Shown: one piece after another, positions 10,852 to 57,495 of the stretch | Layout of the letters: each line of letters begins with the position of its first letter | Position numbering within the stretch: the stretch's first letter is position 1 | IMG/VR virus record: IMGVR_UViG_3300046171_000252 | Coordinates: 124,001-188,000 of that record | DNA length: 64,000 nt | Strand: one strand, 5' to 3' | Program-made: the position numbers and the translations under genes | Notes under the pieces: model-generated | Database searches by the model: none | The model's input: the letters and a program-made list of their open reading frames with translations, nothing else | Told to the model about the DNA's origin: nothing

Positions 10852-10859
10852 TATAAATA
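10852..10859 (+). promoter_or_regulatory. T4-type late promoter
   Basis: TATAAATA; further TAAATA cores at 11896, 13585, 14990 and TATAAATA at 19916. Confidence 0.75.
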
Positions 10860-10886: not shown

Positions 10887-11711
10887 ATGAACTCCAAAGA
10901 AATTAATAGTATTGCAGAAGCATATGCTAAAATGAATATCCGAGGAAATGATTCTGAGGAGCAAAAAAAGCGTCTTGAGAAGAAGCGTGGTATGAAACTG
11001 GACGATCATCCACAATTTAAAAAGGAAGCAAAATTAGATCCTGTTGGTCAGGAAGATGAAGATATTAATAATGATGGTAAGAAAGACAAAACAGATAAGT
11101 ATTTGAAGAATCGTCGTAAGGCAATCGGTAATGCAATTGCCAAAGAGCAAGTTCATCTAAATGATATTTCCAAGACTTACTTAGATCAGATTGCGACTAA
11201 TGAAGATGAAATTGATGAGGCACTGACTGGTGAGCGTCGTCAGGCAGCTGCAAAGAAAATGAATACCGCAAAGTCTGGTAGTGATCGTGCCACTGCATTT
11301 AATCTTGCCACTCGCAATGACATGGGTTCTTCTTACCAGAAGAAATCAACCGGTGGTAAGGGTAGTAGATTCCCTGGATATGGAGACAGAGGTGCTGGTA
11401 ATGCAGCAGCACGTCGTCAAGGTAAGGAACCTATGAGACAAGGACCTGAAAAGAAAGTTTCTGAAGAAACCTTGAAAGCAACCGGATTGTTCTCTGAAAA
11501 AGAGATTGCTGCTATAGAAGAAGCAATGAGTTCTTATGACAAAAATCGTAAGAGAGCAGCACAAAGAGCAGCAGACAGAAATGCTGCCAGAGCTGCTGGT
11601 AAGACTGGTGTAGTTCCTGGTGTAGGTTATGTAACTCCTAATAAGGAGAGAGAAACTTATACTGATGAGAAGGGCACCGAACGCCATAAGTCAGGAGCAA
11701 AAATGTCATGA
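10887..11711 (+). CDS. basic modular protein, putative internal head protein
   Basis: K/R/G-rich modules between acidic IDEA/VSEE/IEEA linkers; DxNNDG Ca-loop-like motif. Confidence 0.65.
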   Translation: MNSKEINSIAEAYAKMNIRGNDSEEQKKRLEKKRGMKLDDHPQFKKEAKLDPVGQEDEDINNDGKKDKTDKYLKNRRKAIGNAIAKEQVHLNDISKTYLDQIATNEDEIDEALTGERRQAAAKKMNTAKSGSDRATAFNLATRNDMGSSYQKKSTGGKGSRFPGYGDRGAGNAAARRQGKEPMRQGPEKKVSEETLKATGLFSEKEIAAIEEAMSSYDKNRKRAAQRAADRNAARAAGKTGVVPGVGYVTPNKERETYTDEKGTERHKSGAKMS

Positions 11712-11902
11712 TGAAGTCCTATCGGAATTTCTCTGAGGACATTGAGCAGCGTCGTCAGGCAATGAAGCAAAGGTCTAGTCAGCAACTACAAAAATTTAAA
11801 GCAAGAACTGCTGGTGCTCAACAAGAAAGACAGGCAGATACTGCTGATCGCGAAAACCTAAAAAAAGAAATCAAAAAAGAATTGCAACAAGACTCTAAAT
11901 AA
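11708..11902 (+). CDS. small coiled-coil protein with capsid-targeting-like N-terminus
   Basis: MKSYRNFSEDIE start. Confidence 0.6.
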   Translation: MMKSYRNFSEDIEQRRQAMKQRSSQQLQKFKARTAGAQQERQADTADRENLKKEIKKELQQDSK

Positions 11903-11919
11903 TTTAAAATTTTTTTGAT

Positions 11920-13440
11920 ATGTCTAAAAATATTACTATTCCGGGATATCTTGATGGTCCTTTGGGAGTTATTCTAGAGGCGATTGATAGCACTCGTGGT
12001 GTGGAAACTTCTCCTATTCCAATGAGTGTTAATCAAAGCGATGTTGATGAAAACCCTGACACTACCAAAACAGTTCTTTTTAAGGCAAAGATTCATGTAA
12101 ATCCGAGTAGAAGAACTGCTATTAGAGATGAGATTGTTGAGTATTTAAATGGTGTTTTGGATAAGGGCAATTTTAGTGATTTTGTAGAAGTAAGAAGTGG
12201 TACACCAACAAAACCTGACTCTGAGCAATTTGATGTTGTAGTCAAATATTCTGGCAAAAAACCACAAGTAATTAGAATACTAGTTAAACCAACTAATGCT
12301 GGTGGTTCTGGCGGTGGTGCTGCTAAAACTAAAATACAAGAAGTTGGTCAAGCATTATTCACTGCCATAAGATATCTTAAGAATAAAGACCTTGAGTGTC
12401 ATCCCGATGATATTTCAAACTGTTTGACGACTGCTGATTATGAGGCAGGTATGGAGTATGTGGATTGTAATAAAGAAGTCAAAATAGATGAAATAATGGG
12501 ACTTGAGCAGCAATGGAAAGATGCATTTATTTTAGGTGCTAATAAAATTCATAAGGAAGTTGGTGAAAGTGGATGGGAATTTTTGAGGGGAGATAGAATA
12601 GTTGATGATGGAGCACTTAAGAAAGCTTTCACTAGAGTAAAGAAAAATAGTCCGGCTGCACCAGATAATGAAGATAAATGGAATCCCTCTGACATATGGA
12701 TGATAAAGAAAAGTGAAAAGAATGCCATAGTATCAAAACTTGCAGAAGAAAATACGATAGATTGCTTAAATGAATATATTGCTTCAAAGTTTAAAGATAA
12801 AGAATTTATTGGATTATCTTTGAAGAAACTTGGTTCAAGTGCTAGATGGACTACGATGAATCCACCTAATACAAAACAACTTGATAAAGCAAAAAAGGTC
12901 AGATTTATTAGATCTAAAACTTTGCAGGAACTGACAGCATTCTCTGCCATGGATGTATATTTTGTTTTTGCACCATCAGGAAGTAAGACTAAGGATAGTT
13001 TTCAGGCAAGAAATTTTGCAGGAACTAATAGGGGAGATTGGAAGTTGGAAATTAAAGGGGAATTTGCTGCTCAGGGAAAAATTCAGGGGCAGGTAATGAG
13101 AAATCTTTTGACTGCTGCTGGTTTTTCTAAACCTGTTCCTAATGAACCATCTTTTGATGATTGCAAACCAGGATCTAATAAGGTGCAGGCAATTAATAAA
13201 GAAATTTACGATATAATGAATGGGTTAAGTCCTAAACCAAAAGGATGGAATGCTAAAACTGCACAAGCAGAAATTCGCACAAAGGATGCTTCATGGAGGT
13301 ATAGTAAGTTGGCAGGACTAAGACTTTTGGAATGGTTGATGAGTCTCCCTCAATCGGATGCAAATCGTGCTACGAAGGAGATGTATCTTTATGCATCTTC
13401 TCAAACTGATAAATCATCTGTTCATTATAAAATTTATTAG
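11920..13440 (+). CDS. putative PD-(D/E)XK-family nuclease
   Basis: TKIQE...DKWNPSDIW...IGLSLKK; TAAATA at 11896. Confidence 0.55.
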   Translation: MSKNITIPGYLDGPLGVILEAIDSTRGVETSPIPMSVNQSDVDENPDTTKTVLFKAKIHVNPSRRTAIRDEIVEYLNGVLDKGNFSDFVEVRSGTPTKPDSEQFDVVVKYSGKKPQVIRILVKPTNAGGSGGGAAKTKIQEVGQALFTAIRYLKNKDLECHPDDISNCLTTADYEAGMEYVDCNKEVKIDEIMGLEQQWKDAFILGANKIHKEVGESGWEFLRGDRIVDDGALKKAFTRVKKNSPAAPDNEDKWNPSDIWMIKKSEKNAIVSKLAEENTIDCLNEYIASKFKDKEFIGLSLKKLGSSARWTTMNPPNTKQLDKAKKVRFIRSKTLQELTAFSAMDVYFVFAPSGSKTKDSFQARNFAGTNRGDWKLEIKGEFAAQGKIQGQVMRNLLTAAGFSKPVPNEPSFDDCKPGSNKVQAINKEIYDIMNGLSPKPKGWNAKTAQAEIRTKDASWRYSKLAGLRLLEWLMSLPQSDANRATKEMYLYASSQTDKSSVHYKIY

Positions 13441-13441
13441 T

Positions 13442-13666
13442 ATGAAACCTGAAATAAAAGAACTAGTAAAATCCTTCAAATCAAAGAAGAAAAATGAGCG
13501 GGAAAGATATAATGATTTTCTTTATCATTGCTTTATGGCATATCATGATAAAGTAAAATCAAAATCGCCAGATAAGGTTAAGAATAAATATATTATTATG
13601 AGGGATAGTATGCTTAAATACCTCATAGCACATGAACAAGAAGTAATAGAACAATTAAGTAAATGA
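13442..13666 (+). CDS. hypothetical protein
   Basis: ORF filling the gap and coupled to the next gene. Confidence 0.55.
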   Translation: MKPEIKELVKSFKSKKKNERERYNDFLYHCFMAYHDKVKSKSPDKVKNKYIIMRDSMLKYLIAHEQEVIEQLSK

Positions 13667-15012
13667 AGTCTTTCTTTCAATTTCTGCGTGAGAGTACTGC
13701 TGTTCAACAAGCCACCCGTCTTGGATTAAAGACTGATGGTCATGGTGGATGGTATGATAATAAGGGAGAGTTTGTTGCAAAGACAGAAAAGGGAACACTA
13801 AAATTTTTTAATAAGCGTCAGAGAGTAGGAAAGCAAGATCCGCCACAAACTGATAAAGAAAAGAATTTATCTGCAACATCATCGGCACCTGCTGCCGCAC
13901 CAGAGGAACCCACACAGGCAAAAGCAGCACCGGAACAAGAACCACAAAAAGATGCCAACACTCCTGTAGTATTAGAACCACCTGAAGTTGAGAAGACAAA
14001 AGGAACTCTCACAATTGCCTTTGGTAGATTTAATCCTCCTACTACCGGACATGAAAAACTTTTGGATACAGTTTCCAAGTCATCCGATGATGGTGATTAT
14101 GTTATTGTTCCATCGCGTAGTCAAGACCCCAAAAAGAATCCATTAGATACTGATACTAAAGTCTCTATCATGAGACAGATGTTCCCTCAACACAGTGAGA
14201 GAATTGTTAATGACCCTCAGAACAGAACCATCTTTGATGTCTTGAAGAAGGCACATATGGATGGGTATGCCAATGTAAGAATTGTTGGTGGTGCAGATCG
14301 CCAGAAAGAATTTGACAAGTTGGTTAATAATTATAATGGTAAGATGTATCAGTTTGATAATGTAGAGGTTCGTTCTGCCGGTGATCGTGATCCGGACTCT
14401 GATGATGTAGAAGGAATGTCTGCATCAAAGCAAAGAAAGGCAGCAGTAGAAAATAATTTTGATGCATTCTATAAAGGTATTCCCTCCTCAATGTCTAAGA
14501 AGGCAGCAAAGGAAATGTTTAATAATATTCGTCTTGCGATGAATGTTTCTGAAGGATGGAACATGTGGGAAATCTCTCCTATATTTGATTGGAAGAATCT
14601 TCGTGAAAATTATATCAAAAAGAATATATTCAACCTGGGTGAAATTGTTGAAAATTTAAATCATGGACTGGTTGGTAGAATTATTCGTAGAGGCACTAAT
14701 TATCTAATCTGTGTCACAGAGGATAACATTATGTTTAAGTCCTGGATTAAGGATGTTATGGAATCTAAGAAAGAAATGCCTAATGTTGCACCCAAAGATA
14801 GAGCAGCAATTAATGCTCGTGCGAAGAATGTTTTTAAGAAAGATTTAAAAGGAACTGTGGTTGGCATAAACGAACAAAAGAATACTGAGGTGTCTGGAGT
14901 TCCTGGTGATCAACGACTTATTGGAACTGATGCACACTTTAAATATGTAAAGTCTTTGGTTCCTGGAAGTGACTGGGGAAAACAATTCATAAATAAGTAT
15001 AGAAAAAAGTAA
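13663..15012 (+). CDS. HIGH-class cytidylyltransferase-like nucleotidyltransferase
   Basis: FGRFNPPTTGHEKL, KNPL, VGGADR, GMSASK. Confidence 0.85.
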   Translation: MKSFFQFLRESTAVQQATRLGLKTDGHGGWYDNKGEFVAKTEKGTLKFFNKRQRVGKQDPPQTDKEKNLSATSSAPAAAPEEPTQAKAAPEQEPQKDANTPVVLEPPEVEKTKGTLTIAFGRFNPPTTGHEKLLDTVSKSSDDGDYVIVPSRSQDPKKNPLDTDTKVSIMRQMFPQHSERIVNDPQNRTIFDVLKKAHMDGYANVRIVGGADRQKEFDKLVNNYNGKMYQFDNVEVRSAGDRDPDSDDVEGMSASKQRKAAVENNFDAFYKGIPSSMSKKAAKEMFNNIRLAMNVSEGWNMWEISPIFDWKNLRENYIKKNIFNLGEIVENLNHGLVGRIIRRGTNYLICVTEDNIMFKSWIKDVMESKKEMPNVAPKDRAAINARAKNVFKKDLKGTVVGINEQKNTEVSGVPGDQRLIGTDAHFKYVKSLVPGSDWGKQFINKYRKK

Positions 15013-15030
15013 CTATTTGTTTGTTTCCAA

Positions 15031-16257
15031 ATGAGTAACACGATATCTGAAGAACCAAATACACAACAACCAGGTGGTGCTGTTGATAAAGTAAGGAAGG
15101 CTGCGAGGCAACTTGCTTATGATGTTCGCTACAAAGTAAAGGGACAATTTAAGGATGGCCAGAAATCTGATGCCGCATCCTTGAAGCGTGCTTACATGCA
15201 GCAACTGGGTAAGTCTCCTGCTCCTGGTCCTGTCAAAGTAATGGCAAAAAAGATGCTTATTGGAGAAGCATATGATTTAGTTGATGTATCTGATACTGTC
15301 AATGAATCTGTTGTCAATGCACTTCTGAAAGTCTTTGCCAAGAAGACTCAGTTGGAAGATGCAGATGGAAATGTCGCATATGAGGTGACTGACATCGTTC
15401 AGGAGGAGATGAAGGATACGAAGTATAAAATTAGAGTTACTGATAAATCAACCGGTAAGACTTATGTCAGAATGGCAGACCGTGAAAAGATTAGTCAGTT
15501 GAGAGCAGACCCTAGAATCTCTTCTGTTGAGATGACCGGATACGGTGATTCATATGACAAACCTGTCGGTAAAGGAAAGGGTGAAGAAGAAAAGAAGGAG
15601 ACCGCAAAGGAAGAATTCATCCATGAGGTAAATGTAGAGGATGATAATCCTGATGCAAATACCAAGAAGATTGATGTAATGAAAGGTAAGAATAAAATTA
15701 TCATCAATCCAACTCAGTCTGAGGAGATGAAACCCGGAGAGGATACATCTGCAGAAAAGACCAAAGAGAGTTCTGCCGATAAGAGAATCAGAATGGTTAA
15801 GAGAAAGATTCTCCAGAGCAAGATGCAAGCAGTTCGTCAGGGTGCCGGTGCAGATATTGTTGCTCATACTGAATTAGAGGGTGAAGAAATTTCTGAGAAA
15901 GCAGGAAGCGAGTGTCCTCCCGAGTCTTCTTCCAAAAAAGAAAAAGAAGATACTGATGATTACAGAAGTATGCCTGCAAAGGTCAATATGGTTAGAAACA
16001 AATTGAGAGCAATGGGTCTCAAGATGTCGTATGAACCAGAAGGTGATATGGTTGAAGCAACTGAAGATTCATTGAAGGATCGCCGCATGGAGCGTGGTGG
16101 TGTTGGTGGCAACATTCGTTATGACAAAGCACCTAAACCTACCAACACTGCTGGTAAAAAGAAACCCTATGATGGTATGTCTGCAGTTGAAAAAGTAAAG
16201 GCAAGTATCCGTGCCAAGTACGGACAGGGTGCCATTATTGATACTAAGAAAAAGTAA
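15031..16257 (+). CDS. modular acidic/basic protein, putative internal head protein
   Basis: repeated (I/V)xE linkers; SYEPEGDMVE and HTELEGEEISE. Confidence 0.65.
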   Translation: MSNTISEEPNTQQPGGAVDKVRKAARQLAYDVRYKVKGQFKDGQKSDAASLKRAYMQQLGKSPAPGPVKVMAKKMLIGEAYDLVDVSDTVNESVVNALLKVFAKKTQLEDADGNVAYEVTDIVQEEMKDTKYKIRVTDKSTGKTYVRMADREKISQLRADPRISSVEMTGYGDSYDKPVGKGKGEEEKKETAKEEFIHEVNVEDDNPDANTKKIDVMKGKNKIIINPTQSEEMKPGEDTSAEKTKESSADKRIRMVKRKILQSKMQAVRQGAGADIVAHTELEGEEISEKAGSECPPESSSKKEKEDTDDYRSMPAKVNMVRNKLRAMGLKMSYEPEGDMVEATEDSLKDRRMERGGVGGNIRYDKAPKPTNTAGKKKPYDGMSAVEKVKASIRAKYGQGAIIDTKKK

Positions 16258-16457
16258 TGCCTGCAGTATCACAAAAGCAACAGAAGTTCTTTGGAATAGT
16301 TCGTGCCATCCAAAAAGGAGAAATGGCACCGACGACTCCTGAGACTGCAAAGGCAGCTGCCGATATGAAGAAGAAAGATGTGAAGGACTTTGCATCTACT
16401 AAACATAAAGGTCTTCCTGAGAAAAAATCTCTCAAAGAGTTTTTGGAGAATATATAG
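16257..16457 (+). CDS. small basic protein (DUF3008-like)
   Basis: MPAVSQKQQKF...DFASTKHKGLPEKK. Confidence 0.7.
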   Translation: MPAVSQKQQKFFGIVRAIQKGEMAPTTPETAKAAADMKKKDVKDFASTKHKGLPEKKSLKEFLENI

Positions 16458-16478
16458 TATTAGTAATTGAGATTTACC

Positions 16479-16679
16479 ATGCTTGCATTCCTATTACCAT
16501 TAGCATCCAAAATCATTAAAGATGCAGTATCTAAAATTCCAGAAAATGAAGAACTGGGTGAGAAAATGGTTGAGATCTGTCTTGTTATTCTTGCTAAGGC
16601 AGTTAAGTTGACCAAAACTGATATGGATGATCAACTTCTTGAAGTCGTAACCAAATCAATTAACGCACGTAAAGAGTAG
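16479..16679 (+). CDS. conserved cyanophage hypothetical protein
   Basis: amphipathic helix, TKTDMDDQL. Confidence 0.65.
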   Translation: MLAFLLPLASKIIKDAVSKIPENEELGEKMVEICLVILAKAVKLTKTDMDDQLLEVVTKSINARKE

Positions 16680-16682
16680 AAA

Positions 16683-18170
16683 ATGAACCAGAAACACATT
16701 AAGGAAGAGGGTCTGCGTGATTGGTTTGGTAAATCTAAATCAAAAGGTGGCAAAAAAGGATGGGTCAATGTCGTGACAGGAGATTCCTGTGCAAGTGACA
16801 AACCCGGTGAAGGTATTCCTAAATGTGTTTCTTCTTCTAAAAGGGCAAGTATGTCCAAGAAAGAAAGAGTTGCTGCTCAGGCAGCAAAGAGAAGAGAAGA
16901 TCCTGGTCAACAAAAGAAGTCTGGAGCATCTAAACCCACTATGGTAAAAACTGACCGTAAAGTAAGAAAAGAGGCAATGGAAGTTAATGGCGCACTTGAT
17001 GAAAATGTTTCATCTGGAAAATCACGTCTGGCTAAAATGGGTAGGGTTTCCGGAAAACCTACTGGTGCCATTACTAATACAGAAAAATCGGCAGAATTAA
17101 AAAAACAAAAAGACACAGAAAAGTCAAAGGATAAAGCAGTTGCAAATAAAGTTGATGTATCAGGAATGAGTCCTTTTGATGCAGCCAGGGTAAAGAAGAG
17201 AGCAGAATTTAAAGCAGAAAAGGAAAGATTGAGAGCACAGAAAAAAATGAGAAGAGAAGAGACTGAAGTACTTGATGAAGCAAAAGATAAGAAAGGTAAA
17301 GGCAGTGGATCTAAAGATGCCTGTTATCATAAGGTGAAGTCTCGTTATTCTGTATGGCCTTCTGCTTATGCATCTGGAGCACTTGTAAAATGTCGTAAGG
17401 TTGGTGCTGCCAACTGGGGTAATAAGAGTGAAGAGACTGAATTTGATTCTATCTCCTTCCAACAATTTCAAGAGAAGTGTTGGAAAGGTTATGAGAAGAA
17501 AGGTATGAAAAAAATGTTTGGTAAGAAATATCCAAACTGTGTTAAGAAGGAGGGATATGCACCTGGTGATGTGGATCAGAAAGTCGGTGCTGTCACTGCT
17601 ATTCCTAAGAGCGAACAGGATGCTGCCAAAGCAAGAATACTTGCAAAGACAAAGGCAAAAATGAAGAAAGAGGAAGTTGAAGAAATTGGTGAGGGTAAGT
17701 ATTCTAGTTCAGTCAGAGCCACCTATGGCGGAAAGACAGAAACTTTCCCTGTAGAGATTTATAGAAAAAAGTCAAAAAAAGCAGAGGCAAAAAAAGTAGA
17801 GGTAAAAGAAGGTGATGGCGATCCTTGCTGGGATACTCATAAACAAGTTGGCATGAAGAAGAAAGGTGGCAAGATGGTGCCTAACTGTGTGCCAAAAAAC
17901 GAGGAGGTAGAGACTCAGAATGAAGGAGCAGCATGGACAAAAAAATCCGGTAAGTCAGAATCCGGAGGACTCAATGAAAAAGGACGTAAGTCTTATGAAA
18001 GAGAAAATCCTGGTAGTGATCTAAAAGCACCATCTAAAAAGAAAGGCAACAAACGTAGAGCATCATTCTGTGCTAGAATGAAAGGTATGAAAAAGAAACT
18101 AACCTCTGCTAAAACTGCAAGAGATCCTGATAGCAGAATTAATAAGTCTCTTAGAGCTTGGAATTGCTGA
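16683..18170 (+). CDS. Lys-rich polyprotein-like protein with about 8 modules
   Basis: modules separated by Glu-rich linkers; two CW...GMKK..GK..PNCV repeats. Confidence 0.75.
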   Translation: MNQKHIKEEGLRDWFGKSKSKGGKKGWVNVVTGDSCASDKPGEGIPKCVSSSKRASMSKKERVAAQAAKRREDPGQQKKSGASKPTMVKTDRKVRKEAMEVNGALDENVSSGKSRLAKMGRVSGKPTGAITNTEKSAELKKQKDTEKSKDKAVANKVDVSGMSPFDAARVKKRAEFKAEKERLRAQKKMRREETEVLDEAKDKKGKGSGSKDACYHKVKSRYSVWPSAYASGALVKCRKVGAANWGNKSEETEFDSISFQQFQEKCWKGYEKKGMKKMFGKKYPNCVKKEGYAPGDVDQKVGAVTAIPKSEQDAAKARILAKTKAKMKKEEVEEIGEGKYSSSVRATYGGKTETFPVEIYRKKSKKAEAKKVEVKEGDGDPCWDTHKQVGMKKKGGKMVPNCVPKNEEVETQNEGAAWTKKSGKSESGGLNEKGRKSYERENPGSDLKAPSKKKGNKRRASFCARMKGMKKKLTSAKTARDPDSRINKSLRAWNC

Positions 18171-53697: not shown

Positions 53698-54201
53698 ATG
53701 AATCCATTTAAAGAGTATATTGAAGTTCTTGAATGTGCCCACATGGGCAATGAGTTTGAGAAGTTTCAAGAAGCATTCAAAAATCACAGCAGAATTATCA
53801 TCCTTGGCAACGGAGGTAGCAGTTCAGTTGCATCTCATATCTCTCAGGACTATATGAAGTTCAGGGGTAAGAAAGTTTCGATTCTTTCTGACCCATCCAT
53901 GTTGACCATGCTTACAAATGATTTTGGGTATGAAAATGCATATCAAAAGTTTCTAGAGTATTATGTGGAGGATGAAACTCTTGTTGTTCTGATGAGTTCT
54001 GGTGGAGAATCAAAGAATATTTTGAATTGTTTAACCTGGTGTGAAGAAAACAAGGTCAACTATGGTATTCTGACGGGGTTCTCTCCTGAAAATACTATTA
54101 GAACTAGGGCAACCAATGCCCTTTGGAATTACTATATCTCTAGTCAAGACTATGGTGTGGTAGAATGTGTTCATCAGATTTTCCTGCACGGAGTCGTATG
54201 A
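53698..54201 (+). CDS. gmhA: sedoheptulose-7-P isomerase (SIS domain)
   Basis: GNGGSSSVASH, NDFGYE, SSGGESKN, ECVH. Confidence 0.82.
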   Translation: MNPFKEYIEVLECAHMGNEFEKFQEAFKNHSRIIILGNGGSSSVASHISQDYMKFRGKKVSILSDPSMLTMLTNDFGYENAYQKFLEYYVEDETLVVLMSSGGESKNILNCLTWCEENKVNYGILTGFSPENTIRTRATNALWNYYISSQDYGVVECVHQIFLHGVV

Positions 54202-54950
54202 GATATTGCTTTGATATTGATGGCACACTTTGCCATACTCCTTGCAATCCAGATGGACATGGTATGAGGTATGAAGAAGCAACTTCATTTCCATGGATGG
54301 TTGGTCATGTTAATCGTCTTTATGATGAAGGACATTACATTATTATGATGACTGCTCGTGGAAGAGGGTCTGGAATTGATCATGGTGATTTGACTCGCAA
54401 TCAACTTGCAATGTGGGGATACAAGTATCATGAACTTGAACCTATGTTTCATAAACCAACTGCGGACCTTTTTATTGATGATAAGGGTATTGATGTAAAT
54501 GAGTGGTTAAAACAACAACCACAAACTAAAGGTGTTATTGCCGGTGCATTTGATGTTATTCATCCTGGATACATTAGAATGTTTTCTGAAGCAAAACAAT
54601 ACTGTAATCATTTAACTGTTGCTCTTCATGTTGACCCATCCACCGAAAGGTCTCATAAACTTTCACCGGTCCAATCTGCCGATGAGCGTAAAGAGATTCT
54701 TCTGGGAATGAAGAACATTGATGATGTTGTTCTTTATAATAATGAGGAAGAATATCTGTCCTATCTCAAGAGTGGTGATTATGAGATTCGTTTTCTTGGC
54801 ACAGACTATAAGGATGGAACATATTCAGGTAAAGAAATAGACATTGATATTGTTTGGTTGGATAGAGAAAATCATAATTACTCTACTACAAAACTAAAAA
54901 CAGATATTTTTAAATCAATTTTACCAAGGGCATCTGAGAACTATGATTAA
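54198..54950 (+). CDS. fusion of HAD phosphatase and cytidylyltransferase-like domain
   Basis: FDIDGT, TARG, FIDDK; then GAFDVIHPGY, GTDY, YSTT. Confidence 0.82.
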   Translation: MRYCFDIDGTLCHTPCNPDGHGMRYEEATSFPWMVGHVNRLYDEGHYIIMMTARGRGSGIDHGDLTRNQLAMWGYKYHELEPMFHKPTADLFIDDKGIDVNEWLKQQPQTKGVIAGAFDVIHPGYIRMFSEAKQYCNHLTVALHVDPSTERSHKLSPVQSADERKEILLGMKNIDDVVLYNNEEEYLSYLKSGDYEIRFLGTDYKDGTYSGKEIDIDIVWLDRENHNYSTTKLKTDIFKSILPRASENYD

Positions 54951-55839: not shown

Positions 55840-56747
55840 GCAAGTTTGTAGTATTGAAGTCTGCGGGACTGGGTAATAGAATTAAGTTATATGTGTCTTA
55901 CCTGCAGAGGTATGACGAACTTTTGATTGAAAAGGAACCTGACTTATATCTCTTTGAGAATTTCAAGTTATGTAATAAGGAAGAGGATATCAAAATCTAT
56001 CCTTGGACTCATTCTGGATGGAGACTTCTAGTTAATGAAGATGAGGTTCAATACTGCGACAAATACAAAACTATAGATCAACTCTATAATGATACTCCAC
56101 AATACTTTATTGATAAGTATCTTCCTGTATGGCAGAAGTTAAGAATTCAACCAGACATTCAAAAGATTATTGACGACTTTACGCAGGACTGGGACAAGGA
56201 AGATATGGTTGGAATCCATGTTAGAACTAATCTGCCACCAGTTGATGACGGAAGTCGTAGTGTCTGGATGGACTATGAAGGATTTGAGAAAGAGATTGAG
56301 AAGTATCCATCTACTCAGAAGTTTTTCCTTGCCACAGACCATGAACCAATAGTCGGATATTACAAGTCTAGATATCCTGGACAGATTATTACATTCCCTA
56401 GGAACGATATTGTTAGGCACGACAATCATACTGATAATGTGAGTCAGACAATCGGTGCATTTCTTGATATGTATTTGTTGTCTCAATGCTATAAGAAGTT
56501 GATTCTTACATGGGGAACTTCTTTCTCGGAATGTTCCTGGTGGTTTGGTGGATGTAGAGCTGAAGTGGTGATGCCAACACTTTGGGACAAAATTCCAACA
56601 GACTTTTACGATATCATTTACAATAAGAAGAATGTGTCCTATAATCTAGGAGGAGAATCAGTCTTTGCTGAGGGTTGTCGCACGTATGCTCCTCTCAGTT
56701 TCGGAAATAACTACACTATCAAAAATTGGATGGTCCATCATGAATAG
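55836..56747 (+). CDS. fucosyltransferase-like protein, paralog of 49611
   Basis: GLGNRIK, GIHVR, FLATD, TSFS. Confidence 0.7.
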   Translation: MSKFVVLKSAGLGNRIKLYVSYLQRYDELLIEKEPDLYLFENFKLCNKEEDIKIYPWTHSGWRLLVNEDEVQYCDKYKTIDQLYNDTPQYFIDKYLPVWQKLRIQPDIQKIIDDFTQDWDKEDMVGIHVRTNLPPVDDGSRSVWMDYEGFEKEIEKYPSTQKFFLATDHEPIVGYYKSRYPGQIITFPRNDIVRHDNHTDNVSQTIGAFLDMYLLSQCYKKLILTWGTSFSECSWWFGGCRAEVVMPTLWDKIPTDFYDIIYNKKNVSYNLGGESVFAEGCRTYAPLSFGNNYTIKNWMVHHE

Positions 56748-57495
56748 GATAGAAGACTACAACAAATTAAAAATAGGTATTGTAACCTGGATTAAAGATT
56801 ATGTTGAAAAGAATGAGATTAAATCCCTTGTTATAGGAGTATCTGGAGGAATTGATTCTGCAGTAGTCTCTACCTTATGTGCAGAAACAGGACTACCAAC
56901 CTATGTGGTTGCCATGCCTCTGCATTCTAAAATTGAAAATAGTACATTATCAAGTGATCATTGTAAATTTTTGCAAGAGAGATACGCCAACATCAGGCAT
57001 AACCGAGTAGAACTGTCGGGTGTTTATGATCAGTTCATGCACAGTTTAACTTGGTGGACTGGTGATAAATTTAATGGCAATGAACTCTCCAATGCAAATA
57101 CAAAGTCTCGTCTTCGTATGGTGACTCTGTATCAAATTGCCGGATCTGTTGGTGGCATCGTTGTCGGCACCGGTAATAAGGTTGAAGATTATGGTGTAGG
57201 ATTCTACACTAAATATGGTGATGGCGGTGTTGATATAGCACCCATCGCAGACTTATACAAAACTGAAGTATGGGAACTTGGAAAGCATCTTAATATAGAT
57301 AAACGAATTATAGATGCAAAACCAACGGATGGTCTGTGGAATGATGGACGAACTGATGAAGATCAAATTGGTGCATCCTATGAGGACTTAGAACATGCCA
57401 TGGAATATGGTAATGGTCCTGCCGTAAGAATCTTGCATGATTATAACTGCAAGAACAAGCATAAGATGAACCCTATTCCGACTTTTAAATTATGA
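56740..57495 (+). CDS. nadE: NH3-dependent NAD+ synthetase
   Basis: GVSGGIDS, SRLRM, GFYTKYGDG, KTEV, PTDGLW..RTDEDQIG. Confidence 0.92.
   Translation: MNRIEDYNKLKIGIVTWIKDYVEKNEIKSLVIGVSGGIDSAVVSTLCAETGLPTYVVAMPLHSKIENSTLSSDHCKFLQERYANIRHNRVELSGVYDQFMHSLTWWTGDKFNGNELSNANTKSRLRMVTLYQIAGSVGGIVVGTGNKVEDYGVGFYTKYGDGGVDIAPIADLYKTEVWELGKHLNIDKRIIDAKPTDGLWNDGRTDEDQIGASYEDLEHAMEYGNGPAVRILHDYNCKNKHKMNPIPTFKL

What the first reader, a model, noticed from the sequence alone, without database searches (positions are those of the whole stretch)
13663..15012. HIGH-class nucleotidyltransferase that appears designed for packaging and processing
Seen: a targeting-like N-terminus, a small GWYD domain, a Pro/Ala linker, the FGRFNPPTTGH catalytic core (NadD/CoaD-like fold), then VSE|G, LRE|N, VME|S and INE|Q-delimited tail modules. 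Inference: an injected NTase acting at the start of infection, for example on NAD or nucleotide signals, rather than an LPS enzyme. The substrate is unknown.
Basis: inference. Interest (0 to 1): 0.62.

Follow-up and report, generated by a model that had tools for sequence, protein, structure and literature searches.

The report
Head-packaged adenylyltransferase of a cyanophage
This gene of a T4-like marine cyanophage encodes an NMNAT/PPAT-type adenylyltransferase whose first ten residues closely match the leader that phage T4 uses to load proteins into its head, which explains why its relatives turn up in purified virions; the gene family and its presence in virions were already known, and its substrate is still unknown.

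Summary
It is the cyanomyovirus core gene T4-GC190 / phrog_395, usually labelled 'cytidyltransferase'. It lies between gp41/mazG and gp61/nrdAB.

The main result concerns residues 1-10 (MKSFFQFLRE|S). They match the T4 IPII/IPIII capsid targeting sequence (MKTYQEFIAE|A) at the four positions that matter in T4: aromatic residues at 4 and 7 for targeting, and L/I at 8 and E at 10 for cleavage. The decapeptide is conserved across orthologues, including three found in virions by mass spectrometry (S-SM1, S-SCSM1, S-CREM2). It is missing from S-PM2, whose protein was not detected. The same genome encodes a T4-type prohead protease, and its gp23 has an FLGE|A site.

The catalytic domain (113-297) keeps its invariant catalytic motifs. 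Its fold matches PPAT and NMNAT equally well, not sugar cytidylyltransferases. A separate RfaE/TagD-like enzyme sits in the glycan cluster.

Only the N-terminal cleavage site beats chance. The internal 'xE|' sites do not, although two fall at predicted domain borders.

Packaging is well supported. Injection, time of action and substrate (a weak lean to NMN/NaMN) are inferred. Virion association and an NAD role were already proposed in the literature. I found no earlier report of the leader.

The parts
13663..15012 (+). Whole CDS, 449 aa plus stop. Orthologue of cyanophage core gene T4-GC190 / phrog_395.
   Evidence: (phrog_395 E 3e-103)
13663..13692 (+). Residues 1-10: T4-type capsid-targeting-sequence-like propeptide with a predicted prohead-protease cut after E10.
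   Evidence: T4 IPII/IPIII N-termini translated; functional positions 4, 7, 8 and 10 from PMC9026906; conservation
13693..13827 (+). Residues 11-55: small helix plus three-strand 'GWYD' domain. It is a mobile module also present twice in the S-H34 'Ser/Thr kinase'. Function unknown.
   Evidence: (phrog_3561)
13828..13998 (+). Residues 56-112: disordered P/A/E/Q-rich linker of variable length.
13999..14553 (+). Residues 113-297: HIGH-class (PF01467) adenylyltransferase domain of the PPAT/NMNAT type.
   Evidence: (VIA Z 14.0 for PPAT, 12.8 for NadM)
14020..14052 (+). Residues 120-130: the (T/H)xGH nucleotide-binding signature. Some orthologues have H at the first position.
14413..14436 (+). Residues 251-258: second signature, equivalent to ISxTxxR. 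S253 and R258 are invariant.
14554..14763 (+). Residues 298-367: linker helix plus a five-strand SH3-like (KOW/Tudor-like) barrel. It is a separate small ORF in S-RSM4 and S-PM2, where it is mislabelled 'ribonucleotide reductase alpha subunit'.
14764..14874 (+). Residues 368-404: basic, disordered, strain-specific 37-aa insert.
   Evidence: a contig lacking 14759-14871
14875..15009 (+). Residues 405-449: conserved C-terminal tail ending in the invariant FIN motif followed by a basic KYRKK end. Role unknown.
10852..10859 (+). TATAAATA, a T4 late-promoter-like box 27 nt before the first ATG (10887) of the gene island that contains the CDS. Weak evidence.
10887..18170 (+). Context: a same-strand island of five large and three small genes. 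All five large products have [LI]xE within the first 20 residues. Two have relatives among S-SCSM1 'virion proteins': one is an orthologue and one shares a module. These are candidate co-packaged proteins.

Best explanation
The gene encodes a modular enzyme that is loaded into the phage head. Shown or directly read: residues 1-10 have the form of the T4 capsid targeting sequence; the phage encodes the T4-type prohead protease gp21; its major capsid protein carries the same F-L-x-E|A cleavage context; and orthologues with this leader are found in purified virions. Inferred: late in infection the leader takes the protein into the scaffolding core of the prohead, gp21 cuts after E10, and the roughly 49-kDa mature protein stays in the head with the DNA and enters the next host with it, as T4 internal proteins and CTS fusions do. 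The mature protein consists of the GWYD domain, a flexible linker, the adenylyltransferase, an SH3-like barrel and a basic tail. The catalytic domain is an intact HIGH-class adenylyltransferase that transfers AMP from ATP to a phosphorylated acceptor. The acceptor is not established. The weak lean is towards NMN/NaMN, giving NAD+ or NaAD, and the phage's own NadE could complete the NaAD-to-NAD+ step. My odds: packaging through the leader about 0.75, delivery into the host about 0.6, a pyridine-nucleotide acceptor about 0.4.
For: Leader: T4 IPII/IPIII begin MKTYQEFIAE|A. In T4, residues 4 and 7 direct targeting and residues 8 and 10 direct cleavage (PMC9026906). Here these are F4, F7, L8 and E10, conserved in 80 IMG/VR orthologues and in alignment A1.

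The leader persists where the domain behind it has diverged or is absent (S-RIM2, S-SM1, S-CREM2).

Protease and substrate context: PF03420 E 7e-35 in the same genome. Own gp23 has FLGE54|A and T4 gp23 has FLTE65|A. A 96-aa ORF right after gp23 starts MKDFNKFIEE|A.

Virion proteomics of orthologues: S-SM1 (PMC3037559), S-SCSM1 (the flanking genes are also 'virion protein') and S-CREM2. All three carry the leader. S-PM2 lacks it and was not detected.

Enzyme: Pfam PF01467 at 31.5 bits against a cut-off of 21. Catalytic motifs are invariant. AF2 pLDDT is about 85. VIA Z is 14.0 for PPAT, 12.8 for NadM and 12.4-12.8 for NadD, with no sugar cytidylyltransferase in the top 50. More family members hit NMNAT models than PPAT models (NadD 8/10, NadR 6/10, CoaD 5/10). 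NadE is present (TIGR00552 at 178.6 bits against a cut-off of 63.65).
Against: There is no direct evidence for this phage, which is known only as a metagenome-derived genome: no virion data, no N-terminal peptide, no assay.

The published virion detections carry the authors' own caveat that abundant proteins may co-purify in CsCl. S-SCSM2R did not show the protein among its 23 virion proteins.

The gene lies in the replication/nucleotide module, not the head module.

Lineages with a leaderless, stand-alone NTase (S-RSM4, S-PM2, jumbo phages) show that the enzyme is useful without packaging.

The late-promoter box is not enriched in the window (6 found against 4.7 expected).

On substrate, all NMNAT and PPAT models score far below their curated cut-offs. 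Structure ties the two. The genome has no NAMPT and no Nudix gene. Jumbo-phage homologues sit next to a methylase, not next to NAD genes.
Confidence: 0.6

Rival explanations
1. The protein is an ordinary cytoplasmic auxiliary metabolic enzyme (NMNAT-like, feeding NadE) that works inside the infected cell. Its appearance in virion preparations is carry-over of an abundant protein, and the N-terminal resemblance to the T4 leader is coincidental.
For: The gene sits in the replication/nucleotide module. Authors warn of CsCl carry-over. It was not detected in S-SCSM2R virions. Leaderless stand-alone versions exist. NadE is in the same genome.
Against: The leader matches T4 at all four functionally mapped positions and is conserved while the residues just after it vary and carry indels. 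Only 3 such starts occur in the genome, one of them right after gp23. There are three independent virion detections, all in leader-bearing orthologues, with neighbouring genes also detected.
Confidence: 0.2
2. The protein is packaged as described, but the acceptor is not a pyridine nucleotide. The enzyme would be PPAT-like (4'-phosphopantetheine) or would act on a different phosphorylated small molecule, possibly a nucleotide signal used by host defence.
For: The top structural matches are PPATs (Z 14.0, rmsd 2.9 A over 155 residues). The first motif is TxGH, as in the PPATs aligned, and the PKKNPL loop is identical to P. aeruginosa PPAT. A JGI source names a 90%-identical protein PPAT. The 'NMNAT' label in the literature rests on a CDD hit of E 5.8e-5. 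There is no NAMPT.
Against: PPAT and NMNAT differ by about 1 Z unit, which is a tie. The profile search against PDB sequences ranks archaeal NMNAT first (E 0.05 against 0.37 for PPAT). The GRFxP start of the motif is shared with the NadM-type NMNATs aligned. More family members hit NMNAT models. No CoA-pathway genes turned up in the genes scanned here, but no targeted search for them was run.
Confidence: 0.3
3. After packaging the protein is cut at several internal sites (after E297, E315, E367 and E404) into separate modules.
For: [LIVM]xE is mildly enriched (10 against 5.5, p about 0.03). E297 and E367 are conserved and sit at predicted domain borders next to disordered segments. S-RSM4 and S-PM2 have the gene split at the E297 border. 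S-CREM2 ends two residues after the E367 equivalent.
Against: Conservation of these sites is no greater than that of [LIVM]xK or [LIVM]xD. E315 lies in a helix. INE404 is in a strain-specific insert. In distant orthologues the residue three positions before E297 is not hydrophobic.
Confidence: 0.15
4. The protein is a sugar-phosphate or glycerol-phosphate cytidylyltransferase for LPS or cell-wall glycan synthesis, as the database label 'cytidyltransferase' suggests.
For: The Pfam family name is CTP_transf_like, and this is the GenBank label in hundreds of records.
Against: No GCT, CCT or RfaE structure appears in the top 50 structural matches. No sugar-NTase model is among the NCBIfam hits. 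The gene is core in cyanomyoviruses with and without glycan clusters. This genome has a separate RfaE/TagD-like NTase inside the sugar cluster.
Confidence: 0.03

Closest known systems
Cyanomyovirus core gene cluster T4-GC190 / PHROG phrog_395 ('cytidyltransferase'; S-SM1 SSM1_190, P-SSM2 PSSM2_194, S-SCSM1 ORF91 'NMNAT')
   Same: It is a direct orthologue. It scores phrog_395 E 3e-103, is 67% identical to S-SKS1 and 45% to S-SCSM1 over the full length, and lies in the same position between gp41/mazG and gp61/nrdA.
   Different: It carries a 37-aa strain-specific insert (368-404). The family has never been assayed, so its names are guesses.
T4 internal proteins IPI, IPII and IPIII with their capsid targeting sequence
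   Same: The N-terminal decapeptide has the same key positions (aromatic at 4 and 7, L/I at 8, E at 10, small residue at 11). The same protease family is present in the genome, and orthologues are found in virions.
   Different: The T4 IPs are proteins of about 95-195 aa with no annotated enzyme domain. This cargo is a multi-domain enzyme of about 49 kDa, and the gene is not next to the head genes. Cleavage and packaging have not been shown here.
T4 Alt (packaged, gp21-trimmed ADP-ribosyltransferase)
   Same: Like Alt, it would be an enzyme carried in the head, trimmed by the prohead protease and injected with the DNA (the injection is textbook knowledge). It is also possibly linked to NAD chemistry.
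   Different: The fold is unrelated. Alt consumes NAD+, whereas this enzyme would make a dinucleotide. Alt is not CTS-targeted (own knowledge).
NadM/NadD/NadR NMN(NaMN) adenylyltransferases
   Same: It shares the Rossmann-like HIGH fold (Z 12.4-12.8), the GRFxP...GH start of motif 1 (as in the NadM-type chains aligned) and the second SxxxxR motif. The best profile hit in the PDB is M. jannaschii NMNAT.
   Different: Identity is 12-17%, and all curated models score far below their cut-offs. The acceptor pocket has not been assessed.
Bacterial PPAT (CoaD)
   Same: PPATs give the highest structural Z (14.0). The TxGH motif and the PKKNPL loop are shared.
   Different: TIGR01510 scores 22.9 bits against a cut-off of 103.3. 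No CoA-pathway context was seen.
NARP2-type phage NAD+ reconstitution (Nampt + Nmnat; Osterman et al. 2024, cited in PMC12801897)
   Same: A phage-encoded NMNAT-like enzyme could restore NAD+.
   Different: The defining partner Nampt is absent from the complete genome, and there is no Nudix or PnuC context.

Membership tests
HIGH-class nucleotidylyltransferase superfamily (Pfam PF01467) | Profile score above the gathering threshold | tested here: met
   31.5 bits against a cut-off of 21, residues 118-231
HIGH-class nucleotidylyltransferase superfamily (Pfam PF01467) | (H/T)xGH signature and the second ISxTxxR-like signature | tested here: met
   TTGH at 127-130 and SASKQR at 253-258. G129, H130, S253 and R258 are invariant across 10 divergent homologues.
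HIGH-class nucleotidylyltransferase superfamily (Pfam PF01467) | Rossmann-like alpha/beta fold | tested here: met
   AF2 pLDDT about 85. VIA Z 14.0, rmsd 2.9 A, 155 of 159 residues of PPAT 3pxu aligned.
NMN/NaMN adenylyltransferase (NadD, NadM, NadR) | Curated equivalog model score | tested here: not met
   For the NTase domain alone (residues 105-305): TIGR01526 22.9 bits against 341, TIGR00482 19.7 against 112, NF002243 13.2 against 127. The whole protein scores 20.8, 17.6 and 15.5.
NMN/NaMN adenylyltransferase (NadD, NadM, NadR) | Adenylyl transfer to NMN or NaMN | not testable with these tools
   No assay is possible, and the acceptor pocket was not modelled.
NMN/NaMN adenylyltransferase (NadD, NadM, NadR) | Genomic company of NAD-pathway genes | tested here: inconclusive
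   NadE is present at 56665-57495. NAMPT/NAPRTase and Nudix are absent. NadE is 42 kb away inside a sugar cluster.
Phosphopantetheine adenylyltransferase (CoaD) | Curated equivalog model score | tested here: not met
   TIGR01510 22.8 bits for the domain alone (21.1 for the whole protein) against a cut-off of 103.3. The structural match ties with NMNAT.
T4-type CTS-targeted head-internal proteins | N-terminal leader of about 10 residues with aromatic residues at 4 and 7, L/I at 8 and E at 10 | tested here: met
   F4, F7, L8, E10. Compared with T4 IPII/IPIII translated; determinants from PMC9026906; conserved.
T4-type CTS-targeted head-internal proteins | T4-type prohead protease (Peptidase_S77) encoded by the same phage | tested here: met
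   PF03420 E 6.9e-35 at genome positions 102657-103106
T4-type CTS-targeted head-internal proteins | Protein physically present inside virions | not testable with these tools
   Known only for the orthologues of S-SM1, S-SCSM1 and S-CREM2, from published mass spectrometry. This phage is uncultured.
T4-type CTS-targeted head-internal proteins | Leader removed by the protease after E10 | not testable with these tools
   The supplements of the two proteome papers hold no peptide-level data.
Cyanophage T4-GC190 / phrog_395 | Profile match and conserved position in the genome | tested here: met
   phrog_395 E 3e-103. Same neighbours as PSSM2_194, which is annotated 'T4-GC: 190', and as the S-SKS1 orthologue.
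NARP2-type NAD+ reconstitution pathway | Nampt partner gene in the phage | tested here: not met
   PF04095 is absent from the genome, which is 100% complete by CheckV. The control search found it in 8 of 14 reference genomes.

The most novel reading that the evidence does not exclude
The whole 10.9-18.2 kb island would encode a set of gp21-trimmed, head-packaged effector proteins. These would be the adenylyltransferase, the 506-aa protein whose orthologue is a virion protein, and the lysine/glutamate-rich modular proteins. Cyanomyoviruses would then inject an enzymatic cocktail. The adenylyltransferase would act in the first moments of infection on a nucleotide other than a standard cofactor precursor, for example to make or cap a signalling or defence-related nucleotide, and so would define a new substrate class for the HIGH fold.
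Probability: 0.12. Interest if true: 0.8.

Novelty: new member of a known kind. Interest (0 to 1): 0.45.

Why it matters
T4-like cyanophages are a major cause of death of Prochlorococcus and Synechococcus. This gene is one of the few cyanophage-specific core genes, and relatives are very abundant in marine metagenomes: all 8,000 candidates scored in the word search passed E <= 1e-5. Its function has been open since 2010.

Recognising a T4-type targeting leader turns the repeated but ambiguous finding that the protein turns up in virion preparations into a mechanism that can be tested. It predicts an exact mature N-terminus at residue 11. It also suggests a simple sequence rule for finding other head-packaged cargo in marine phage genomes. 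If the enzyme is delivered with the DNA, it would be a naturally occurring enzyme carrying a T4-type targeting leader.

Tried and rejected
1. Complex prediction of residues 1-60 with the phage's gp22 scaffold gave no verdict (score 0.00). This is no evidence either way.

2. ESM Atlas look-alike searches for the GWYD domain and the SH3-like domain gave nothing usable.

3. PADLOC defence models gave no hit for this protein or its neighbours.

4. I looked for peptide-level mass-spectrometry data that could show a mature N-terminus at residue 11. None is held in the supplements of PMC9602691 or PMC10665884.

5. I looked for an NAD-gene context around distant jumbo-phage homologues. They sit next to a small methylase gene, with no NAMPT.

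6. A link to the ligase-like gene T4-GC71, which is adjacent or fused in S-SM1, S-RIM2, S-RSM4 and S-PM2, was rejected for this phage. Its copy lies about 75 kb away.

7. The late-promoter argument is weak. TATAAATA is not enriched in the window.

8. RNA evidence: contigs from RNA libraries of three studies lie on parts of the gene. Contigs cannot prove transcription, strand or timing.

9. The internal protease sites were tested and found no better conserved than control tripeptides.

10. The big representative-protein search was not run.

Compliance: no alternative genetic code was used. Read laying was given 4,401 letters.
Full report
WHAT IS THERE

The window belongs to a complete 207.6-kb T4-like cyanomyovirus genome and covers genome positions 124001-188000. 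The closest cultured relatives are Synechococcus phage S-SKS1 (67% amino-acid identity) and Prochlorococcus phage P-SSM2.

The gene lies in the replication and nucleotide-metabolism module. DNA polymerase, uvsX, gp41 and mazG lie upstream. gp61 and nrdA/B lie downstream. It is the orthologue of PSSM2_194, which is annotated 'T4-GC: 190', and it matches phrog_395 'cytidyltransferase' at E 3e-103. All 8,000 candidates scored in the word search passed E <= 1e-5, so the family is common in marine data.

ANATOMY

AlphaFold2 on a 29-sequence alignment, together with the alignments, gives seven parts.

- Residues 1-10: a short helix.
- Residues 11-55: a small helix plus three-strand domain holding the invariant H27, G28, G29 and W30 (pLDDT 75-80).
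- Residues 56-112: a disordered P/A/E/Q-rich linker of variable length.
- Residues 113-297: a well-modelled Rossmann-like domain (pLDDT about 85) carrying FGRFNPPTTGH (120-130) and a second signature at 251-258.
- Residues 298-367: a linker helix and a five-strand SH3-like barrel. A separate fold of this part gave pLDDT about 80 for the barrel. The best matches were Tudor and KOW barrels at Z 6-8, which is a generic fold.
- Residues 368-404: a basic, disordered insert. It is absent from the common 412-aa variants and from one environmental contig.
- Residues 405-449: a conserved tail ending in an invariant FIN motif followed by basic residues.

No other gene of the genome shares these modules.

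THE N-TERMINUS IS THE KEY FEATURE

I translated the T4 internal-protein genes from the T4 record. IPII and IPIII begin MKTYQEFIAE|A, and IPI begins MKTFKEF. The protein here begins MKSFFQFLRE|S.

A review of T4 head assembly reports that only the first ten residues of IPIII are needed for packaging. Residues 4 and 7 matter most for targeting, and residues 8 and 10 for cleavage. Asp at position 10 blocks cleavage but not targeting (PMC9026906). Here those positions are F4, F7, L8 and E10.

In 80 IMG/VR orthologues and in alignment A1, M1, K2 and F7 are invariant and F4 and E10 are kept in at least 90%. The residues immediately after position 10 vary and carry indels.

The leader survives where the domain behind it has diverged (S-RIM2 and S-SM1, MKKFSAFL.E|A) and where that domain is missing altogether (S-CREM2, MKNFSSFLTE|A).

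A strict pattern found only three such starts among 4,326 ATG/GTG/TTG-started ORFs (nested starts counted) in the whole genome. One is this protein. One is a 63-aa ORF in the same island. One is a 96-aa ORF immediately after the major capsid gene.

The genome encodes the T4-type prohead protease (PF03420, E 6.9e-35). Its gp23 carries FLGE54|A where T4 gp23 has its FLTE65|A site. The T4 cleavage position after Glu65 is textbook knowledge.

PUBLISHED PROTEOMICS AGREES

T4-GC190 is listed as a cyanophage core gene and an experimentally determined virion protein of S-SM1, and as not detected in S-PM2 (PMC3037559). The S-SCSM1 orthologue, 45% identical over the full length, was found in the virion proteome. 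The genes on both sides of it are annotated 'virion protein' (PMC9602691). The S-CREM2 orthologue was found with 3 peptides (PMC10665884).

All three detected proteins carry the leader. In S-PM2 the NTase domain has no leader. It is annotated as fused behind the C-terminal half of a ligase-like protein, and the SH3-like domain is a separate ORF. That makes three positives with the leader and one negative without it. The sample is small, and the S-PM2 study also missed several true structural proteins.

Both recent papers already propose that a virion-carried NMNAT-like enzyme could enter the host, and both warn of CsCl carry-over. A full-text search for 'capsid targeting sequence' together with 'cyanophage' returned only the T4 review. 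As far as this library shows, the leader has not been reported for this family.

THE ENZYME

Pfam PF01467 is passed at 31.5 bits against a cut-off of 21. Against 30-39%-identical homologues, including stand-alone proteins of about 190 aa from S-RSM4 and Pseudomonas phage PA5oct, the invariant residues include G121, R122, P125, P126, G129, H130, S151, K157, N159, P160, L161, D212, R213, S238, G240, R242, S253 and R258. Catalysis is therefore under selection.

Foldseek and VIA-align place the domain with PPAT (Z 14.0, rmsd 2.9 A, 155 residues), NadM NMNAT (Z 12.8) and NadD (Z 12.4-12.8). No sugar or glycerol-phosphate cytidylyltransferase is in the top 50.

A family profile against PDB sequences ranks M. 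jannaschii NMNAT first, but weakly (E 0.05; NadM 0.19; PPAT 0.37). Across ten family members, NMNAT models are hit more often than PPAT models (NadD 8, NadR 6, CoaD 5). Every score is far below the curated cut-offs.

The 'NMNAT' name in the S-SCSM1 paper rests on a CDD hit of E 5.8e-5.

The protein is therefore an adenylyltransferase of the PPAT/NMNAT type, and its acceptor is unknown. I lean weakly towards NMN or NaMN.

GENOME CONTEXT FOR THE SUBSTRATE

The phage encodes a bona fide NadE (window 56665-57495; TIGR00552 at 178.6 bits against 63.65). NadE would convert NaAD, the product of a NaMN adenylyltransferase, into NAD+. However, the genome has no NAMPT/NAPRTase and no Nudix gene. NadE sits 42 kb away among NAD-dependent sugar enzymes. 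Jumbo-phage homologues lie next to a small methylase gene rather than NAD genes.

A second HIGH-class enzyme at 54165-54950 is RfaE-domain-II/TagD-like. It sits beside SIS, epimerase and UDP-glucose dehydrogenase genes.

THE INTERNAL 'xE|' SITES

The protein has ten [LIVM]xE tripeptides against 5.5 +/- 2.0 expected (p about 0.03). Five are conserved in at least 90% of orthologues, but [LIVM]xK (5 of 11) and [LIVM]xD (3 of 5) are conserved just as well.

E297 and E367 do fall at predicted domain borders next to disordered segments. S-RSM4 and S-PM2 split the gene at the first border, and S-CREM2 ends at the second. E315 is inside a helix. INE404 is in the strain-specific insert. Multi-site processing remains possible but is not supported.

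THE ISLAND

Genes 10887-18170 all lie on the + strand. They start 27 nt after a TATAAATA box (10852) and end before a strong sigma-70-like promoter in front of petE. The only + strand terminator-like site inside is a weak six-pair stem at 11278. The box alone is not significant (6 found against 4.7 expected).

All five large proteins of the island have [LI]xE within their first 20 residues, against 22% of crude gene calls genome-wide. gp21, gp22, gp23 and the 96-aa ORF have it too. This was a post-hoc test.

The 506-aa protein is homologous to the S-SCSM1 virion protein gp282 (E 7e-22). The 274-aa protein shares a 36-residue module at 72% identity with virion protein gp280. The island may therefore encode several co-packaged proteins.

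EXPRESSION

Contigs from RNA libraries of three studies lie on parts of the gene, some with no differences. Contigs cannot show transcription, strand or timing.

VERDICT

The new element is the precise T4-type leader. Injection, early action and the substrate are inferences. The gene family, its presence in virions and the NAD hypothesis were already published. I therefore rate this a new member of a known kind with moderate interest.

Noticed in passing
window 10887-18170: This is a same-strand island of five large and three small genes. All five large products have [LI]xE within their first 20 residues, against 22% genome-wide. Two have relatives among S-SCSM1 'virion proteins': one is an orthologue and one shares a module. 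The island may be a block of co-packaged, protease-trimmed head proteins sitting inside the replication module.
   Followed up: partly
window 11920-13440: A 506-aa protein (phrog_1462, no Pfam hit) is homologous to S-SCSM1 virion protein gp282 (E 7e-22). By eye it has a PSD...SLKK pattern reminiscent of PD-(D/E)xK nucleases. This was not tested.
   Followed up: partly
genome 106098-106388 (outside the window; L092:8099-8389): A 96-aa ORF directly after gp23 starts MKDFNKFIEE|A, which is like the T4 leader, and ends in a long Gly/Asn repeat. It is a candidate small internal head protein.
   Followed up: partly
window 11711-11902: A 63-aa basic ORF in the island starts MKSYRNFSE|D. This is the third leader-like start in the genome.
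   Followed up: no
window 54165-54950: A second HIGH-class nucleotidyltransferase, RfaE domain II / TagD-like (TIGR02199 E 1e-14), lies next to SIS, epimerase and UDP-glucose dehydrogenase genes. It is the likely sugar-nucleotide enzyme of a large glycan cluster (about 39-59 kb).
   Followed up: partly
window 56665-57495: A bona fide NH3-dependent NAD+ synthase NadE (TIGR00552 at 178.6 bits against a cut-off of 63.65) lies inside the sugar cluster. The genome has no NAMPT and no Nudix gene.
   Followed up: partly
window 14759-14871: A 37-codon insertion/deletion polymorphism. One environmental contig and the common 412-aa protein variants lack this stretch. It is strain variation, not splicing.
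   Followed up: yes
L085:2034-2288 (S-RSM4_062), L096:6559-6834 (S-PM2p144): The small ORFs labelled 'ribonucleotide reductase alpha subunit' or 'NrdB' in many cyanophage records are the stand-alone SH3-like domain of this protein family. The label is an annotation error that has spread (phrog_4808).
   Followed up: yes
L091:19296-20270 (S-SM1), L085:281-1483 (S-RSM4), L096:3026-4805 (S-PM2): A ligase-like gene with a KWDG motif (T4-GC71) lies directly upstream of, overlaps or is fused to the NTase gene in several cyanomyoviruses. In this phage its copy lies elsewhere, at about genome position 62.4 kb.
   Followed up: partly
L088:1985-4009 (S-H34 'serine/threonine kinase'): The GWYD module occurs twice in a 675-aa kinase-like protein. 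Kinases are also reported in cyanophage virion proteomes (PMC10665884), so the module may mark packaged proteins.
   Followed up: no
L097 and L098 (Asteriusvirus CRJP21, Erwinia phage Kaldavass): In jumbo phages the stand-alone homologue of about 180 aa is always next to a small DNA methylase gene. The meaning of this conserved pair is unknown.
   Followed up: no
window 16683-18170 and 16257-16457: The 495-aa island protein ends in DUF6321 (E 4e-22). The 66-aa ORF and several neighbours share short modules with many PHROG families of unknown function, which indicates extensive module shuffling among these lysine/glutamate-rich proteins.
   Followed up: no
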